A stretch of DNA of 64,000 nt from Fimbriosthenelais zetlandica. Taxonomy: Eukaryota. Location of the stretch: the NCBI GenBank assembly GCA_977030845.1, contig OZ365114.1, positions 15,934,001 to 15,998,000 of the forward strand, written 5' to 3'. The position numbers and the translations under genes were made by a program. Below the pieces are notes generated by a model, which was given only the letters and a program-made list of their open reading frames with translations, had not been told where the DNA came from and did no database searches. How positions within the stretch are numbered: the first letter of the stretch is position 1; every line of letters starts with the position of its first letter. Of this stretch, positions 3,058 through 64,000 are shown one piece after another.

Positions 3058-5666
3058 TGATGTTTAATCCATAGAGCGAGCTGAACAATGTTTGTAGCAT
3101 AACATGAAAACGTTGCTATAGTAACATGTGAGGGAATGAGTCATCCTGGGTCATACTACAGAGAACACCTATCCTTTACTATAGGATCTATGCTTGGTTG
3201 CCTCCATTGCTTCATCCCATCAACAGTGTCTTCTAGGCTCGGTTCAAAATTAACAAGTCACCAACAATGAAAGTTCAGAGGTTAATAGAGGGGAGGGCAA
3301 AAATGATAGACGAAGAGGTAAATCAAGTATGTAACTATGTCAATCAGATAATTGCATTCTAAGCATTTCACTGCAGAACTGTGTTGAATGCGTGTGGCAA
3401 TTGTTTCCTGATATCATTATTTATCAGCTACTGGGTTAATTCTTCTGGATCTGTCAGGAAATGGTGGGAACTAGTTCTACTCAGATTTCATGTAGAATGC
3501 ATGTGTGAGAGCATTTGAATCAATAGCCTTCTGCAGTAGGAATTTCAGCGAAACCTCCTGAGGTCATAGAAAAATATATATATATGGGTGCCTTGAGGAT
3601 AAGTATATGCCACGTGTTGAATATTAATCTGCAGATTAAACATTTGTTCATGAAAACTGTGATTTGATCAGGATAGACTGCACTGAGGGTGGTTTAAACC
3701 TTTCTGCTCAAATATTGAATGGGTATTTAGGGTCATTTTTAGTGGATTTAAGCCTGCGGGATTCGTGAGCTCGTCCACTTATGATGGTAAAGCATATACA
3801 ATAATGCCTTCTGATGATACTCGCAAACATAGCAATAGATATAATTAGCATGACAGAAGGTCCATGGGTTTTCCTTTGACAAGTAGAGATACCCAATGTT
3901 ATATGGGGTTGAACTCAGGTCTGAGGACAAGCCTACTTAAATTGACCAAACAATAATGCTCTATTTATACCACAAACCTATCCCAATTGACAAGTTTCTG
4001 CAATCATGGAACACAGCTTACCTTTGGGACGGGTCTTAAAAGAAGGTGACAACTTAAGGTCAAACTTGGGTAATGCAAGGTGTGAATTACAAGGAAATTC
4101 TCACAAGTGGCACAAAGGAGTTCATGATCAGTTACTCTATAAAATTGGGTGATCAGTTTAGGTCAATCATGTCTGTCCTTAGCTGACTATACTGACTTCT
4201 CCTTCTCACAAAGAACCCAGTCATTGACAACCTTTGAGAGACTGTAGCTTATTTGCCTATGATGAAGTGGATGCTTTTAAACTATCATCAATCCATGTGA
4301 ATGGGTTTGGAGATTGGAGAGACACTGATATGGGCCTAGTTCAAGGTAAAATTGATTGAAAATATAAATTGGAGTGTGCTTCGATTTCAGGTAGTGCCAT
4401 ATACCACGGGATCACACGTGTTATTCGATAGTTAGAAGTGGCATTTTGAAGAGTTTTTATGTTCATTGGCAACGTTTTATGGATGGTGACAAACAAACTT
4501 TAATGTACGAATTGAAACTACATTGCTCTTTCTAAACCATTAAATCTAACAACTCAAAAACCCCACAAGTAAAATGACTTTTGTTTTTGAAGAACAATGT
4601 AGCTTTTCTAGAAATTATACACAATGAATGAGAAAAGAGTAAATGTTTTGTATTGCTGCATGCAAGTGAATGAAATTTAAAGCATTGTATAACTATGAAC
4701 AATGAGGAATCCTGAAACGTATATTTTTTTCTTGTTTACCATTGAATCACATTTATAGCAAGGACATCAAGGACTGGCGAGGAGAACCAAGCAAATTACT
4801 TTTTATGATCTTCATGATAAACTATTGAAGGTAACCTTATATTATTTGCATAAAAATGTTCCTCTACAGTTGAGTTTTAGAACTTGTAAACCTTTTACAC
4901 CTTGCTGTGGGTTTGCTGATTGGAAAAATAAAATTTATGTTTCTACTTTATGTAGACAAGTATAGCCTGAAGTGGTTCCCGTACCTTTTCCCCCTGTGGC
5001 TAGTAAACATAAACAATGCTTAAGGAGGACGTCCCACACAAAATGCGAGCTAATTGTTATCTGATTGTCACAAAGAAAGAGCAGGTCCTGGGAGGGTGCC
5101 AAATAGCTTGTATATTGCCAGTGGAGTCAGGGGTCTCACGTCTTCAAGGCTATGTCTTCCCTGACCCACAGGGGAGCAATTGTCATTGCTGTTTCCATGG
5201 AAATTAATGTTTCCATCATCGACTTTTTCCCATGAAATGTAAAGTATGACGGAGGAGTAACTTATCACAATGGGATGATGATTCAGTCAATTTGTGATGT
5301 TACAGCTTATCAAACATGAGAAAGCCGAGGGAACAATGAAACACCCAAAACAATTGGCAAACTATAGGAGTGTATTCTGGCAAGATAAAAGTGATAATGC
5401 GTTATCTCCTGGATTGCCTCATCAGAACCAAATCATCCTGTCACTCATTCTATGAATCATGGTTCCATGGATGAGTCAATCAATTAGAAAATTTGACTCA
5501 TATAATCTGAACTCATTATCGAAATTAAATTTACATATAAGCGACTTCAAAAGAAAAAAATAGACTATTTCTATCACTTTTAGATTAAAAAATCTAAACT
5601 TTTTTCAAAGTTCATTAAAATGGTGGCCAAACCTATCAAAAATGATCTGCACTTGGGAGTCAGACT

Positions 5667-59770: not shown

Positions 59771-59835
59771 TTTTTTCACTATTATTTACTATTTTTTACT
59801 ATTTTCTTCTATTATTTACTATTATATACTATTAT
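59771..59835. repeat. 10-bp tandem repeat (ATTATTTACT)x~6.5 abutting the element 3' terminus
   Basis: Exact 10-bp periodicity with substitutions; the last unit merges into B2. Confidence 0.85.
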
Positions 59836-59890
59836 ACACATGAGCGAACTACTGAGTGGTTTGGCTAGCTTATCATTTAATGAAGGCTCC
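59834..59890 (-). repeat. Terminal direct repeat B2 (57 bp)
   Basis: Identical to 60149-60205 (atacacatgagcgaactactgagtggtttggctagcttatcatttaatgaaggctcc); contains ATTAAA on the element strand. Confidence 0.92.
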
Positions 59891-60148
59891 TAATGCATCA
59901 CATACAGTTACAGCAGTAAGATGGTAGACATACATATATAATGATACAATGAGAACATACAAATATGTAGCACAAGTAAATTTTTTTTTTTTTTTTTTAA
60001 ATGGGCTGCTGCCTGCTGGGCGCTGGTCAGTGGAATGTTGACCGTGACGTAGGCGGTGACGTAGGTGGTTACGGAGCCGTCGAGGTGGAGACGTTGCTAA
60101 GTCAGAGTCTCGTCTTGGTATAATCACCATACCAACGTATGGTTTACC
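59891..60148 (-). repeat. Putative A2 segment (258 bp) of the split direct repeats
   Basis: Lies between the two B copies. Its partner A1 is predicted upstream of gag, outside the window, so it is unverified here. Confidence 0.6.
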
Positions 60149-60205
60149 ATACACATGAGCGAACTACTGAGTGGTTTGGCTAGCTTATCATTTAATGAAG
60201 GCTCC
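60149..60205 (-). repeat. Direct repeat B1 (57 bp)
   Basis: Begins 32 nt after the YR stop codon; identical to 59834-59890. Confidence 0.92.
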
Positions 60206-60237
60206 AAACCGCCAAACAGAGAAGTAGTTAGTGAAAG

Positions 60238-61161
60238 TTAAATGTTCTTAGAAAAACGAGAATCAACCTCAAGCCTGTGAGACACTGAAGGCTTTAAATA
60301 TTTAAACACACATGCGGATTTCCAAGTTCCCCTGTCCTTAATGTCAGCCAAGGAGCATCCTGACTCCAGCATATAACTGGCACCACCAGATCTTAGTGAA
60401 TGCGATGAAAAGTTCCCTTTAATCTTGGCTTCCGTCAGCAGATTTTTGAAGCACGTAGAGAAGGCATTATAGGTTAAGTGGGGTAGCCTATGAGTAGAGA
60501 AGACTGCAACACAGGCAGAAGGGTGAAACTTGGAATACAAGCGCCATAGCCAATACACAGGACATATGGACTTTTCCTTGAGCGACCTGACAGGAATAGT
60601 AACAGGTTTCGCTCTAGTTATAGTCTTTGAAGATTGCAAAGTTAACAAGAGACCCCAATCTGTAAATTCTATGTTACCCCAACACAGTGTATGCACTGAT
60701 TTCACAATATGAGAGACTCGTAAAAGAGCCCTAAACATTAACAGAGATCCGACATAAGTTAAACATTCAGTATCACAGTCAAAATCCACACCAATATATA
60801 TCTTCCTGAGGTGTGAAGGTGTAATAGGATCTTTTGAATCCGGTATATAATTTTTCTTTAAACCATCCAGCATCATCTTAACACTTGGGTGAGATAAGCG
60901 CACCGGGTCATAACCTAATACACAATGATAAAATACAATAGCTTGAACATATGCAACCACTGATGTGGGGGACATCAGGTTTGACAAAAAGGCAACATAT
61001 AAGCACATTTGTGCAACATCACATGGAATAGTTTTAAGGTTGTAAGAGGTGCAAAAAACGCTCATAGCAGGACCATTGTTTAGATCTAGTTTTCTGCGTC
61101 GATGGCGCCACAGCTGACAATCGTAGTTTCTGGACTCTATCCTGAAGAGCTTTCACGCTCC
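60238..61161 (-). CDS. Tyrosine recombinase of the retrotransposon, with an apparent +1 frameshift near its N-terminus
   Basis: Catalytic signature LLRVSH, HSLRSG (HxxR), GTWKS (H/W) and FKY. The N-terminal helix VKALQDRVQKLRLSAVAPSTQKTRSKQWSCYERF is in a different frame and joins CTSYNL if one base of the A6 run at 61053-61058 is removed. Confidence 0.9.
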
Positions 61162-63182
61162 CTGGAAATAGAACATAACAAGGAATCGAAACAGCACAAA
61201 AATGCACCAGACAATAATTCTACTGCCTTTTTCTGAGTGTCAGGATAAGCCATACGAGACAAGCTATCTGCTACCAAATTGTTCTTGGTAGATATGTACC
61301 TGGGAGTTAGTTTAATTTTATACACTTTACACACCCAGAAGAGCTCCCGCAACCAAGCTGTACACGTTACACTGCTACTGGTGCCCTTAGCCACCATGTA
61401 GTACACTTGAGTGTTATCTGTGAAAATCATTAATTCTTTTTCCACACATTCGGGACCCCATCTTTTAACGCCCTGGAGGATGGGCCAGAGTTCCATAATG
61501 TTTATGTTGTCCACAGGTAGGGTTGGGTCCATGGGTGGGTATGATACATGGCCACAGTTACTATCCACCTCTATTCGATTGGACTGATCCCAGAAGCCCA
61601 TGATCCAGTCGTTGTTCATGTATGCTGCGAATCCGCGGGATGAAGCATCAGTCACTAGGGGGTATGGGTGGCCAATTGGTGCCAAGGACGTAACACCATT
61701 GAAGCAATCACAAAACGAGGACCACCACACAATGTCCTGACGTACCTCGTCAGTAATACGAGAGGACTTTATATTCTTGTTAATCATGAATTTATACAAG
61801 TTAAATAGTCTTCTACAGTAGATTCTCCCACCTTCAACCAGCGTGGCACAGTGGGACAATAGGCCTGTAAGGCGTTCAAGCTGCTTCTTGCTGATCGATG
61901 AGGCAGCAATATAAGTGTGAAGAATCTTTCGTAATTTCACCAGTTTAAGTTGTGGTAACCTCAATTGCATTTTCAAAGTATCAACTTCAATACCAAGAAA
62001 AGTGGTTGTCTGCGATGGAGGACTGACTTTGTTCCATGATATATGGAAACCTAGGTACCTTAATACTCTTATGATAGTCAATAAGGCCTCCTGACCTTCA
62101 GCATAAGTAGGAGTTATGCAGGCAAAATCATCTAAATAATTGACAACTTGGAGCTTATGTACCTCAGTAAGAATGTCATGGATGACAGTAGAGATCAAAT
62201 TGAAGTAGTATGGGCCTGTTTTAAGGCCGAAGCAGAGTCTATTGTCAATAAAGGTAGCATCAGAACCATCAATGCTCCATCTAAATCCCATATACTTTTT
62301 GTGGGCTGGCAATATGGATACTGCTCGGTATGCTGATTTAATGTCCACAGTTGTAATAAAATCACCTTGATTCATGAAACCAACAACGTCATCGATGCCT
62401 TTGTAACAGAATGTCTCATACAAAGTAGAGCAGAAGGAGTTTACTGATTTACCTTCAGGCTGGCTGCAGTCAGTGATTGGCCTTATGTCAGAATCACCCT
62501 TAGGGACGCAGCCGAGGGAATGAATACACTGAGGTTTCTCCGTGGCTACCTCTATCATACCCTCTGCTAACTCCTTGAAGATTATAGAATCCATCTTCTT
62601 GCTTGCCTCAGGCATCAAAATGGAATTGTAGTTGGGACAATCATAACTAGGGGGTTCACTATCCACGACTGGAAATCCTTCTGCTACCCCATTAAAAACT
62701 GCCCAGTGCAACTCGGATACATCCTTCTGAGCTGCAAATATATAGCTGGAAAACCTACATGGTTTCAACTGGGCTTTAGAAGCACCTATGTAGTGCTCAC
62801 AGTGACAGCGGCCACTGATACAAGAGTTGTACACAGTTATTTTCCTATCAGCCGATGTGGGGGGAGTGACAAAACTAACCTCATCGTCACACCCTACAGG
62901 CAAATCGTCATATAAGTTGAGAAGTACAGGCTGAGGAGGTGAAGAAACATAACTAGAGTCTTTAAGTAGATCCACTGGGGGCTGCGGCCCTTCACAAGGA
63001 GAAATTTCATAGTCAAACTCCGTGGAAATATCAATAAGACTTACTTCCGTGCGGTGATCGTGCGTGTGGTCATATGTTTGTGTACACACATTTGTGGTGA
63101 CGTCATCCGAGTCAGCGGACTCTGTATTGTTACTGTTAGCCAAACACGCCGATACTGCCTGAGCTTCCCAACTCGCCGGATC
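61137..63182 (-). CDS. Reverse transcriptase / RNase H (pol) of the retrotransposon
   Basis: Uninterrupted frame with RPITDCS, VDIKSAY, LCFGL, NYLDDF (RT) and TDAS, NIMELW, FTDN, ADSLSR (RNase H). The track start at 63143 is a TTG; the frame is open back to the gag TAG at 63183-63185. Confidence 0.95.
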   Translation of the reverse strand, partial: DPASWEAQAVSACLANSNNTESADSDDVTTNVCTQTYDHTHDHRTEVSLIDISTEFDYEISPCEGPQPPVDLLKDSSYVSSPPQPVLLNLYDDLPVGCDDEVSFVTPPTSADRKITVYNSCISGRCHCEHYIGASKAQLKPCRFSSYIFAAQKDVSELHWAVFNGVAEGFPVVDSEPPSYDCPNYNSILMPEASKKMDSIIFKELAEGMIEVATEKPQCIHSLGCVPKGDSDIRPITDCSQPEGKSVNSFCSTLYETFCYKGIDDVVGFMNQGDFITTVDIKSAYRAVSILPAHKKYMGFRWSIDGSDATFIDNRLCFGLKTGPYYFNLISTVIHDILTEVHKLQVVNYLDDFACITPTYAEGQEALLTIIRVLRYLGFHISWNKVSPPSQTTTFLGIEVDTLKMQLRLPQLKLVKLRKILHTYIAASSISKKQLERLTGLLSHCATLVEGGRIYCRRLFNLYKFMINKNIKSSRITDEVRQDIVWWSSFCDCFNGVTSLAPIGHPYPLVTDASSRGFAAYMNNDWIMGFWDQSNRIEVDSNCGHVSYPPMDPTLPVDNINIMELWPILQGVKRWGPECVEKELMIFTDNTQVYYMVAKGTSSSVTCTAWLRELFWVCKVYKIKLTPRYISTKNNLVADSLSRMAYPDTQKKAVELLSGAFLCCFDSLLCSISRERESSSG

Positions 63183-63554
63183 CTATTTAGAGTTAGATTG
63201 CCTATCCTTTTTATGGCAATCTTTCCAGGCATGGTCCCTGGAGCCACAGTCGGAACAACGATGGGTATAGATGCAGCTCTTAGAAGAGCAGCCAACGTCC
63301 GAGTTGAACCTCCGACATGTGGAGAACCGCTTCTTCCTCTGGCTATGGCCGCCGACATGGGCGCGGCCATCTTTACTGGCGTTTGCCTCGATAGAAGTAT
63401 CAAAACAGAAGAAGCGAAGTAACTCATCATGGCCTATACCTCGGAAGGCTGACACACCCTTTCTATTCGCCCTAGCACGTACAGACTTGTCAAAGCGCAT
63501 GAAAGCCTCAAACGTATACAGCTTGGTTGCCCCCTTCTCTGTCAAGGTGCGTAT
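63183..63554 (-). CDS. gag-like ORF1, C-terminal part with tandem CCCH and CCHC zinc fingers
   Basis: IRTLTEKGATKLYTFEAFMRFDKSVR...CRRFNSDVGCSSKSCIYTH (C-x8-C-x4-C-x3-H), then CSDCGSRDHAWKDC (C-x2-C-x4-H-x4-C). Confidence 0.85.
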   Translation of the reverse strand: MRTLTEKGATKLYTFEAFMRFDKSVRARANRKGVSAFRGIGHDELLRFFCFDTSIEANASKDGRAHVGGHSQRKKRFSTCRRFNSDVGCSSKSCIYTHRCSDCGSRDHAWKDCHKKDRQSNSK

Positions 63555-63603
63555 AGTCTTTCAAAATCAGCAGAAATAAGGAAAGTTTTTAAATGGGCTG
63601 TCT

Positions 63604-64000
63604 ATGCTGTATAATCCCTTTGACATCATCACCGTCTTCATACAACTGCTCTAAGGTATTCATGGCCACCATCAAAATTTTTTCATAAGAGTCAACAGAA
63701 TCCCCCTTGTCAATAAAGTTTTTCTGGTCAAAAGGCTTACTGTTGCGTTTACGATGCTTCCTTCCTCTTGAAGATGACTGGGAGGAGCTGGAATCTAACG
63801 ACGAGTCAGATGAGGATGAGCTATCCCTAGTATCAATCCTGTGGCTGTGGGCGTGGCCGTGTCTGTCACGGTGGACATCTCTCCTCCTATGACTGGACCT
63901 GGACCTGGAGTGGCTTTTAACTGTGAGCTTCTCCAGCATGCCTTCAATACGGTCCATACGGTGTTCTAATGAAGACAGTTCACCATGTTTATCAGCTACA
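63604..64000 (-). CDS. gag-like ORF1, upstream part (open to the window edge)
   Basis: Frame open from 63999 (VADKHGELSSLEHRMDRIEG), with an Arg/Ser/His-rich low-complexity tract, ending in KGIIQH. It is separated from the downstream part by a 49-nt interruption. Confidence 0.8.

What the first reader, a model, noticed from the sequence alone, without database searches (positions are those of the whole stretch)
63143..63200. gag and pol in one frame separated by a single UAG, with an 8-nt spacer and a GNRA hairpin: candidate stop-codon readthrough in a YR retrotransposon
gag ends QSNSK-UAG (63185-63183) just after its zinc knuckle, and the same frame continues GAU CCG GCG AGU UGG... through all of RT/RNase H. 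The first in-frame AUG of pol is residue 177 of the track ORF, downstream of the conserved GVAEGF pre-RT motif, so independent initiation looks unlikely. Exactly 8 nt after the stop is the stem-loop GAGUU-GGGA-AGCUC (63174-63161) with a GNRA tetraloop. An 8-nt spacer before a structured element is the established geometry of MuLV gag-pol UAG readthrough. DIRS-order elements are mostly described with overlapping ORFs, so conserved readthrough would be a notable expression strategy; I cannot confirm novelty without a search.
Basis: partly seen in the sequence, partly recalled or inferred. Interest (0 to 1): 0.78.

Follow-up and report, generated by a model that had tools for sequence, protein, structure and literature searches.

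The report
Gag-pol stop-codon readthrough in Ngaro retrotransposons
A tyrosine-recombinase (Ngaro-type) retrotransposon has its gag and pol genes in one reading frame split by a single stop codon.

Summary
On the minus strand, gag ends with a CCHC zinc knuckle and UAG (63185-63183), and pol continues in the same frame. An 8-nt spacer precedes a 5-bp hairpin with a GGGA loop.

The stop is not a private mutation. All 13 copies in this genome keep it. One in-frame stop sits just after the gag zinc knuckle in 22 distinct families: 13 here and 9 in two other public assemblies, with pol 33-51% identical.

The linker after the stop is unalignable and 77-272 codons long, yet always open and in frame. 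It often has no AUG before a conserved Cys-rich pre-RT motif. One family instead overlaps gag and pol with an A_AAA_AAC -1 slippery site.

Together this strongly supports translational recoding that yields Gag-Pol.

The hairpin is weak (-3.5 kcal/mol), no better than shuffles, and not conserved. What is conserved is AAA-UAG-G (12 of 14 UAG-clade families), and in 7 of the 15 junctions scored (the 14 families plus the degraded copy L029) a G-run 14-17 nt downstream.

The window copy itself is dead: gag has a 49-bp insertion and YR is frameshifted.

The parts
59833..64000 (-). Ngaro-like YR retrotransposon, about 4.5 kb. Its 5' end (the A1 repeat and the start of gag) lies about 390 nt beyond the window end.
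   Evidence: Boundaries come from pairwise comparison of 12 genomic copies and mapping of a complete copy (L017) onto the window.
63186..64000 (-). gag-like ORF (the part inside the window), interrupted in this copy. It has no Pfam match.
   Evidence: Translation. Copy L017 carries an uninterrupted 380-codon gag frame ending in the same UAG. Pfam finds nothing.
63556..63604 (-). Private 49-bp insertion that breaks the gag frame in the window copy. It repeats sequence from the A1/5'-leader junction of the element.
   Evidence: Alignment A1 against two other copies; blastn gap.
63216..63257 (-). CCHC zinc knuckle (CX2CX4HX4C) at the C-terminal end of gag, preceded by a CCCH-like finger.
   Evidence: Translation. 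The same knuckle sits just before the stop in the other families.
63182..63188 (-). Recoding context AAA-UAG-G. The stop codon is at 63185-63183.
   Evidence: Identical in 13 of 13 copies. AAA-UAG-G occurs in 12 of 14 UAG-clade families, with +4 G in 14 of 14.
63175..63182 (-). 8-nt spacer GAUCCGGC. GAU-YCG-GC is shared with families L054 and L034.
63161..63174 (-). The loop GGG at 63169-63167 is the G-run that recurs 14-17 nt after the stop in 7 of 15 junctions scored (14 families plus the degraded copy L029).
   Evidence: Hairpin at -3.5 kcal/mol, context z about 0. Chance frequency. G-run enrichment (background 4.4%, P about 1.6e-6, post hoc).
61137..63182 (-). pol ORF (variable linker, Cys-rich motif, RT, RNase H region). 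It is in frame with gag and uninterrupted in this copy.
   Evidence: Translation; PF00078 E=4e-14. Homologues are 37-51% identical, some carrying PF17917.
62751..62840 (-). Conserved Cys-rich pre-RT motif (I-x-V-Y...C-x-C-x-H...Q-L-K-P-C-R-F), residues 115-144 after the stop. It lies upstream of the first in-frame AUG (62615).
61983..62507 (-). Reverse transcriptase domain.
   Evidence: Pfam RVT_1, residues 226-400.
60238..61207 (-). Tyrosine recombinase ORF. It overlaps the end of pol in the +1 frame. In this copy its N-terminal part is frameshifted by a 1-nt indel near 61065.
   Evidence: PF00589 E=5.7e-9. Comparison with L017.
59834..60208 (-). 3' split direct repeats: B1 60208-60149, A2 60149-59994, B2 59893-59834.
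   Evidence: the repeat finder on L017; mapping to the window.
63511..63530 (-). 5' arm (in gag) of a 20-nt long-range complementarity with 61349-61368 (in pol). It gives 19 Watson-Crick pairs plus 1 G.U in the sense RNA.
   Evidence: 0 of 100 shuffles; identical in all copies.
61349..61368 (-). 3' arm of the long-range complementarity.

Best explanation
The locus is a copy of a young Ngaro-type tyrosine-recombinase retrotransposon family. In this family, and in most related families, pol (linker, Cys-rich motif, RT, RNase H) has no start codon of its own. It is translated as a Gag-Pol fusion when a small fraction of ribosomes decode the gag UAG as a sense codon (programmed stop-codon readthrough).

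Shown: the single in-frame stop is conserved across deep divergence. The post-stop linker is kept open and in frame although its sequence and length drift freely. Conserved coding sequence precedes the first AUG. The stop sits in a conserved AAA-UAG-G context, or UGA followed mostly by C or U in a second clade.

Inferred: the bypass is translational readthrough by a near-cognate tRNA, and the local context (A-rich -3..-1, +4 G, possibly the GAU-YCG-GC spacer and a G-run at +14 to +17) sets its efficiency. The 5-bp hairpin is at most a minor contributor.

These elements encode no protease, so the fusion would physically tether RT/RNase H to the nucleic-acid-binding Gag. The window copy itself cannot do this, because its gag and YR frames are broken.
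For: (1) All 13 copies (95-100% identical over the 161-nt junction; 97-100% over the 501-nt query) keep UAG and its flanks.

(2) I walked up the pol frame from the RT match in 20 further loci of this genome and 9 loci from two other assemblies. This gave a single in-frame stop directly after a gag zinc knuckle in 22 distinct families, with pol 33-51% identical to the window. Gag C-termini are at most 55% identical between families, and the first 120 post-stop residues at most 24%.

(3) The linker is 77-272 codons, never interrupted, and always in the gag frame.

(4) There is no in-frame AUG between the stop and the conserved Cys-rich motif in the window family, L030, L048 and L043. The first AUG comes after more than 220 codons in L027 and L044.

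(5) Context. In the 11 UAG-clade families tested, the last gag codon is AAA in 10 of 11, although AAA:AAG is 125:140 elsewhere (P=0.003). The +4 base is G in 11 of 11 (P about 5e-6). Three more families also have AAA-UAG-G. AAA-UAG-G and UAG-G are documented type III readthrough contexts, and UGA-C is a documented leaky context (PMC3542737).

(6) A sister lineage (L039 and L053) replaces the in-frame stop with an ~85-nt overlap carrying A_AAA_AAC in the gag register, two codons before the gag stop. This is the canonical -1 frameshift route to the same fusion.

(7) Elements L048 and L050 have no DNA match in this genome, so they come from other genomes.
Against: There is no expression data: no RNA-seq, Ribo-seq or peptide evidence.

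The downstream RNA of the window family is not unusually structured (z = +1.1 to -0.03). Efficient UAG-G readthrough in known systems usually needs a 3' structure.

In the Candida Tca2 retrotransposon, a gag-UGA-pol junction with a predicted pseudoknot did not drive readthrough in reporters and contained a cryptic promoter (PMC2194720). An in-frame stop alone is therefore not proof.

The statistics treat families as independent, and shared ancestry inflates them. One family has UAA, normally the tightest stop.
Confidence: 0.75

Rival explanations
1. Pol is expressed separately from Gag. The route would be internal initiation at a non-AUG codon, an IRES, termination-reinitiation, or a subgenomic transcript from a promoter in the junction. 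The in-frame stop would then be a true terminator.
For: The Tca2 junction holds a cryptic promoter and does not support readthrough in reporters. A TTG lies 13 codons after the stop. The downstream region shows no strong stimulatory structure.
Against: Independent initiation puts no constraint on the gag/pol frame relationship. Yet 22 of 22 scorable families keep the same frame with exactly one stop, despite many indels in a 77-272-codon linker. The open frame always begins exactly at the gag stop. The one exception carries a canonical -1 slippery heptamer, which only makes sense for a fusion. No AUG lies near the stop to allow reinitiation.
Confidence: 0.12
2. One reading: MuLV-style readthrough, in which the hairpin 8 nt after the UAG (63174-63161) is the stimulatory structure.
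For: The hairpin exists with the stated spacer and appears in the MFE folds. Across 19 families, 7 have some hairpin of at least 5 bp starting 6-10 nt after the stop, against 18% background (P=0.04). A few families do have stable 3' structures (L034, L048, L038, L042, z about -2).
Against: The hairpin is only -3.5 kcal/mol and no pseudoknot partner is seen. Context z-scores are about 0 or positive. It does not vary among copies, so no covariation test is possible. Families sharing the same spacer and G-run (L054, L034, L030, L029) cannot form this hairpin. Mean z over 16 families is -0.4.
Confidence: 0.15
3. The stop is removed from a fraction of transcripts by splicing or RNA editing, giving a continuous gag-pol mRNA.
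For: Three families have GU directly after the stop (UAG-GU or UAA-GU), which resembles an exon/intron boundary.
Against: Most families have GA or GG at +4/+5. No conserved acceptor is seen. All genomic copies, which derive from reverse-transcribed RNA, retain the stop.
Confidence: 0.04

Closest known systems
Gammaretrovirus (MuLV) gag-pol UAG readthrough (type III signal)
   Same: gag and pol share a frame and are separated by one UAG followed by G. There is an 8-nt spacer before a predicted structure. The outcome is a Gag-Pol fusion made at a low ratio (PMC3542737, PMC4178896).
   Different: MuLV needs a compact pseudoknot. Here there is only a weak, non-conserved 5-bp hairpin. The element has no protease, no DDE integrase and no LTRs. 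It is a YR retrotransposon of an invertebrate.
Luteovirus/polerovirus CP-readthrough (AAA-UAG-GUA) and Tombusviridae replicase readthrough (UAG-GGR)
   Same: They use the same heptanucleotide core, AAA-UAG-G. In the review table these signals rely on long-distance base pairing rather than a compact local pseudoknot.
   Different: They are plant RNA viruses. Their distal partner pairs with a structure just 3' of the stop. The 20-bp long-range duplex found here has its arms 330 nt upstream and 1.8 kb downstream of the stop, and no role for it has been shown.
Candida albicans Tca2 (pCal) gag-UGA-pol
   Same: It is a retrotransposon with gag and pol in frame, separated by one stop with a predicted 3' structure.
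   Different: It is a Ty1/copia LTR element. Reporter tests showed the flanking sequence is insufficient for readthrough (PMC2194720). This is the main cautionary precedent.
Ngaro elements as described in fish, frogs, fungi and protists
   Same: They have three ORFs (gag-like, RT/RNase H, YR) and A1...B1-A2-B2 split direct repeats, with no protease or methyltransferase (PMC9210276, PMC3783388, PMC8969392).
   Different: The accessible descriptions speak of overlapping ORFs. [quoted passage not shown] None mentions an in-frame gag stop or readthrough.
Alphavirus and type II UGA-C readthrough
   Same: The second clade here (pol 35-40% identical) has UGA followed by C (3), U (2) or A (1). UGA-C is the classic leaky context.
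   Different: The full UGA-CGG or UGA-CUA motifs are not present. Extended stem-loops are seen in only some of these families (L038, L042, L041).

Membership tests
Ngaro-type YR retrotransposon (order DIRS) | Reverse transcriptase / RNase H pol ORF | tested here: met
   PF00078 E=4e-14. Homologues also carry PF17917.
Ngaro-type YR retrotransposon (order DIRS) | Tyrosine recombinase ORF in place of a DDE integrase | tested here: met
   PF00589 E=5.7e-9 / 1.9e-9. No integrase or protease family was hit.
Ngaro-type YR retrotransposon (order DIRS) | Split direct repeats A1 ... B1-A2-B2 (not ITR plus ICR) | tested here: met
   A1/A2 are 156 nt and 100% identical. B1/B2 are 60 nt and 98% identical, with B1 abutting A2. 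About 99 nt of unique sequence lies between A2 and B2.
Ngaro-type YR retrotransposon (order DIRS) | No methyltransferase domain (this separates Ngaro from DIRS1-like elements) | tested here: met
   Pfam scans of pol and the flanking ORFs show only RVT_1 and Phage_integrase.
Programmed gag-pol stop-codon readthrough (general) | gag and pol in the same frame, separated by exactly one stop, conserved among relatives | tested here: met
   13 of 13 copies and 22 families.
Programmed gag-pol stop-codon readthrough (general) | Downstream ORF lacks its own usable start; coding constraint begins at the stop | tested here: met
   There is no AUG before the conserved Cys-rich motif in 4 families. The first AUG lies beyond residue 220 in 2 more. 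The linker is always open.
Programmed gag-pol stop-codon readthrough (general) | Measured readthrough product (Gag-Pol protein, reporter activity) | not testable with these tools
   No expression data are available.
MuLV-type (type III) signal | UAG followed by G | tested here: met
   +4 G in 14 of 14 UAG/UAA-clade families.
MuLV-type (type III) signal | Compact pseudoknot or stable structure about 8 nt 3' of the stop, conserved with covariation | tested here: not met
   There is only a -3.5 kcal/mol hairpin. z-scores are about 0. The hairpin is not conserved in relatives. No dedicated pseudoknot predictor was run.
Luteovirus-like AAA-UAG-G signal | AAA-UAG-G core context | tested here: met
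   12 of 14 families. AAA is preferred over AAG (P=0.003).
Luteovirus-like AAA-UAG-G signal | Long-distance base pairing that stimulates readthrough | tested here: inconclusive
   Perfect long-range gag/pol complementarities exist in three families (20, 15 and 14 nt). Their geometry differs from the viral cases and no function is shown.

The most novel reading that the evidence does not exclude
Ngaro retrotransposons as a clade depend on translational recoding to make Gag-Pol. They would use a previously unrecognised animal readthrough signal: AAA-UAG-G, a GAU-YCG-GC-like spacer, and a G-run positioned at the ribosomal mRNA entry site (+14 to +17). This signal would work without a pseudoknot, possibly tuned by long-range gag-pol RNA pairing. 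Sister lineages have switched to UGA-C or to A_AAA_AAC -1 frameshifting, which mirrors the recoding diversity of retroviruses in an unrelated, protease-less retroelement order.
Probability: 0.2. Interest if true: 0.7.

Novelty: new member of a known kind. Interest (0 to 1): 0.5.

Why it matters
How DIRS/Ngaro elements express RT relative to Gag is essentially unstudied. The accessible literature only says that the ORFs 'overlap'. A conserved in-frame stop with a defined context would add an order of retroelements to the list of recoding users. A -1 frameshift variant in a sister lineage strengthens that case.

It would also give annotators a rule: do not call these copies pseudogenes, and do not start pol at the first AUG. 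It offers a compact, apparently structure-poor UAG-G readthrough context from an animal for mechanistic study.

It further implies an uncleaved Gag-RT fusion, because no protease is encoded. That bears on how these elements package and reverse-transcribe their RNA.

Tried and rejected
- Private nonsense mutation: rejected. All 13 copies and 22 families keep a stop.
- Stable local RNA structure in the window family: folding 28, 86, 152 and 156 nt gave z = -0.03 to +1.08.
- Structure across families: mean z is -0.4, and only some families reach about -2.
- Covariation test of the hairpin: impossible. The copies are identical there, and other families are unalignable after the stop (alignment A2).
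- Rfam scan of the element: only two sub-threshold chance hits.
- Pfam on gag and on the post-stop linker: nothing.
- Literature: 'Ngaro' plus 'readthrough' returned 2 hits that I did not open; from their titles they concern zebrafish TE expression and dinoflagellate 5hmU. 'Tyrosine recombinase' plus 'stop codon readthrough' returned no relevant paper. DIRS and Ngaro are absent from the large frameshifting review.
- The original Ngaro paper (MBE 2004) and the RNA 2003 recoding survey are not held. Prior description therefore cannot be excluded.
- Taxonomic breadth: the tools give no organism names for the ENA and Logan samples (ERZ25767047, ERR14368249). I could not test fish, echinoderm or fungal Ngaro elements.
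- The genome search scored only 83 of 591 candidates and later could not cut loci, so the family survey is a sample.
- The large representative-protein search was not used, because the protein family is not in doubt.
Full report
**What is there**

The finding lies in a roughly 4.5-kb retrotransposon on the minus strand. It spans window 59833 to about 64393, so its 5' end lies beyond the window. A complete copy elsewhere in the genome (locus L017) shows this order:
- A1 repeat;
- a 380-codon gag-like frame;
- UAG;
- a 679-codon pol in the same frame;
- a tyrosine-recombinase ORF overlapping the end of pol in the +1 frame;
- B1-A2, about 99 nt of unique sequence, then B2.

Pfam finds RVT_1 in pol (E=4e-14) and Phage_integrase in the third ORF (E about 1e-9). 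It finds no protease, integrase or methyltransferase. With the split direct repeats, this meets the definition of a Ngaro-type element of the DIRS order (PMC8969392, PMC9210276).

I did not check that.

**Checking the observation**

- The CCHC knuckle is at 63257-63216.
- The UAG is at 63185-63183, and the frame stays open from 63182 to 61140.
- The first in-frame AUG is residue 190 after the stop. That is residue 177 of the mechanical TTG-started ORF, and it lies after GVAEGF.
- The 8-nt spacer is followed by the hairpin GAGUU-GGGA-AGCUC at 63174-63161.

A private 49-bp insertion at about 63556-63604 shifts the gag frame; its sequence repeats the A1/leader junction of the element. A 1-nt indel shifts the N-terminal part of the recombinase ORF. 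Only pol is uninterrupted here.

**Is the stop a private mutation?**

No. A DNA search of the 447-Mb assembly found 13 copies. They are 97-100% identical over the 501-nt query and 95-100% over the 161-nt junction. All carry the UAG and essentially the same flanks; two have a C-to-U change in the spacer, and none changes the hairpin. These copies are too similar to count as independent evidence. They do show that the transposing lineage carried the stop.

**Deeper comparison**

A six-frame search with the pol protein found at least 86 matches at 33-52% identity. I fetched about 1.9 kb upstream of the RT match for 20 of them and walked up the pol frame.

Fifteen of these loci represent 12 further families. 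In each, the first stop upstream is a single in-frame codon directly after a gag zinc knuckle, and gag is open in the same frame for 76 to more than 400 codons upstream, in several loci up to the edge of the fetched locus. Four loci (L029, L032, L033, L035) were too degraded to score. One is discussed below.

The word-based protein search returned only unnamed proteins from ENA and Logan assemblies, at most 51% identical. I fetched nine of their contigs, from ERZ25767047 and ERR14368249. All nine show the same arrangement. Two of them have no DNA match in this genome, so they come from other genomes.

In total, 22 distinct families have gag-stop-pol in one frame. Between families, gag C-termini are at most 55% identical. 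The first 120 residues after the stop are at most 24% identical, which is effectively unalignable. The linker between the stop and the RT match varies from 77 to 272 codons.

Many indels have therefore occurred in this linker, yet frame and openness are always preserved. That is expected only if ribosomes enter pol from gag.

**No independent start**

A Cys-rich motif ending in Q-L-K-P-C-R-F lies 50-180 residues after the stop, upstream of RT. It was found by motif search in nine of the 19 families examined. In the window family, L030, L048 and L043, no in-frame AUG lies between the stop and this motif. In L027 and L044 the first AUG comes after residue 220. In the window it occupies 62840-62751, while the first AUG is at 62615.

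**A frameshifting sister lineage**

In L039 and its sister copy L053, gag lies in the frame that requires a -1 shift to enter pol, and the overlap is about 85 nt. The heptamer A_AAA_AAC sits in the gag register two codons before the gag UAG. Both copies keep the run of seven A. This is the canonical eukaryotic -1 slippery pattern X_XXY_YYZ (PMC3542737). An alternative recoding route to the same fusion strengthens the case that Gag-Pol is the product.

**What the signal is**

The hairpin is weak.
- It folds at -3.5 kcal/mol.
- The downstream 28-156 nt fold no better than dinucleotide shuffles (z from -0.03 to +1.08).
- The exact geometry occurs at 0.9% of positions, and a relaxed one at 18%.
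- Among 19 families, 7 have some 5-bp hairpin 6-10 nt after the stop (P=0.04). A few have clearly stable 3' structures. There is no common structure, and Rfam finds nothing.

The local context is what is conserved.
- In the clade closest to the window (pol 41-51% identical, 14 families), 12 have AAA-UAG-G, one has AAG-UAG-G and one has AAA-UAA-G.
- For the 11 families tested, Lys codons elsewhere are AAA:AAG = 125:140, so 10 of 11 AAA at the last gag codon gives P=0.003. A +4 G in 11 of 11 gives P about 5e-6 against codon-position-1 composition.
- Three families share the spacer GAU-YCG-GC with the window.
- In 7 of the 15 junctions examined (the 14 families plus the degraded copy L029), a run of 3-6 G starts 14-17 nt after the stop. 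Background is 4.4%, giving P about 1.6e-6, chosen post hoc.
- The encoded residues at that spot differ (W-E, R-G, E-G, G-G, R-D), which points to an RNA-level rather than a peptide-level constraint.
Families that share the G-run cannot form the hairpin.

A second clade (pol 35-40% identical) uses UGA followed by C (3), U (2) or A (1). Two further families use UAG-G and UAG-A.

All these P values assume independent families, so they are optimistic.

**Comparison with known systems**

The review table in PMC3542737 lists these type III readthrough signals:
- UAG-G plus a compact pseudoknot (gammaretroviruses);
- UAG-R plus an extended stem-loop (epsilonretroviruses);
- AAA-UAG-GUA with suspected long-distance pairing (luteoviruses, poleroviruses);
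- UAG-GGR with proximal plus long-distance pairing (Tombusviridae).

It lists UGA-C as a leaky context. The Ngaro junctions match the primary-sequence part of type III, and most closely the luteovirus heptanucleotide. They do not meet the MuLV pseudoknot criterion.

Tca2 is the cautionary precedent. Its gag-UGA-pol junction did not drive readthrough in reporters and hid a promoter, although pol was shown to come from the gag-pol RNA (PMC2194720).

**Prior knowledge**

In the open library, the Ngaro and DIRS papers I opened describe three ORFs that 'frequently overlap' (PMC9210276, PMC6681497, PMC3783388). None of those I read mentions an in-frame gag stop or readthrough; two further papers that co-mention Ngaro and readthrough were not opened. 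The large frameshifting review does not mention DIRS or Ngaro.

The founding Ngaro paper and the reviews by Poulter and colleagues are not held. That laboratory also described the Tca2 in-frame stop, so it may well have noted this layout. I therefore rate the finding as a new member of a known kind, and not as something categorically new.

**Verdict**

The readthrough interpretation is well supported by comparative evidence (about 0.75). The MuLV-like hairpin is not supported (about 0.15). The informative features are the AAA-UAG-G context, the +14 G-run and the frameshifting sister lineage. Direct expression evidence is lacking.

Gag and pol were always searched as separate pieces.

Noticed in passing
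window 63511-63530 and 61349-61368 (minus strand); also L051:937-951 / 2478-2492 and L048:2561-2574 / 3096-3109: There are long-range complementarities between gag and pol inside the element RNA. The window family has 20 nt (19 Watson-Crick plus 1 G.U in the sense strand; 0 of 100 shuffles; identical in all copies). L051 has 15 of 15, with its 5' arm ending 12 nt before the UAG. L048 has 14 of 14. Their function is unknown. Possibilities include RNA cyclisation, dimerisation or modulation of recoding.
   Followed up: partly
L039 (G000:C15:42670-44620, minus) and L053 (G000:C14:1293800-1294500): This is a Ngaro family in which gag and pol overlap by about 85 nt. It carries a canonical -1 slippery heptamer A_AAA_AAC in the gag register two codons before the gag UAG, and both copies keep it. 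It is a likely -1 programmed frameshift variant.
   Followed up: partly
window about 63556-63604 (minus strand): The private 49-bp insertion that breaks gag in the window copy duplicates the junction between the A1 repeat and the 5' leader of the same element. This suggests a template switch during reverse transcription.
   Followed up: partly
L017:8238-8308; L047-L052: The tyrosine-recombinase ORF is in the +1 frame relative to pol in 7 of 7 elements checked, usually overlapping the pol end by 25-70 nt. How YR is translated (frameshift, reinitiation or a separate RNA) remains open.
   Followed up: no
window 62751-62840 (minus strand): There is a conserved Cys/His-rich motif (C-x2-G-x-C-x-C-x-H ... 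Q-L-K-P-C-R-F) upstream of RT. A motif search found it in nine of the 19 families examined. It has no Pfam match and may be a zinc-binding pre-RT module specific to this Ngaro clade.
   Followed up: partly
L047:2585-2600 and L048:2972-2987 (approximate): Two families from assembly ERZ25767047 share a hairpin (CCAUC, a 6-nt loop, GAUGG) starting 23 nt after their stops (UAA and UAG), in otherwise unalignable sequence. It could be an RNA element or a conserved short peptide.
   Followed up: no
window 63135-63140 (minus strand): The window copy has a private 6-bp tandem duplication (AACAGT-type) 40 nt after the stop. It adds two residues in frame relative to the other 12 copies.
   Followed up: yes
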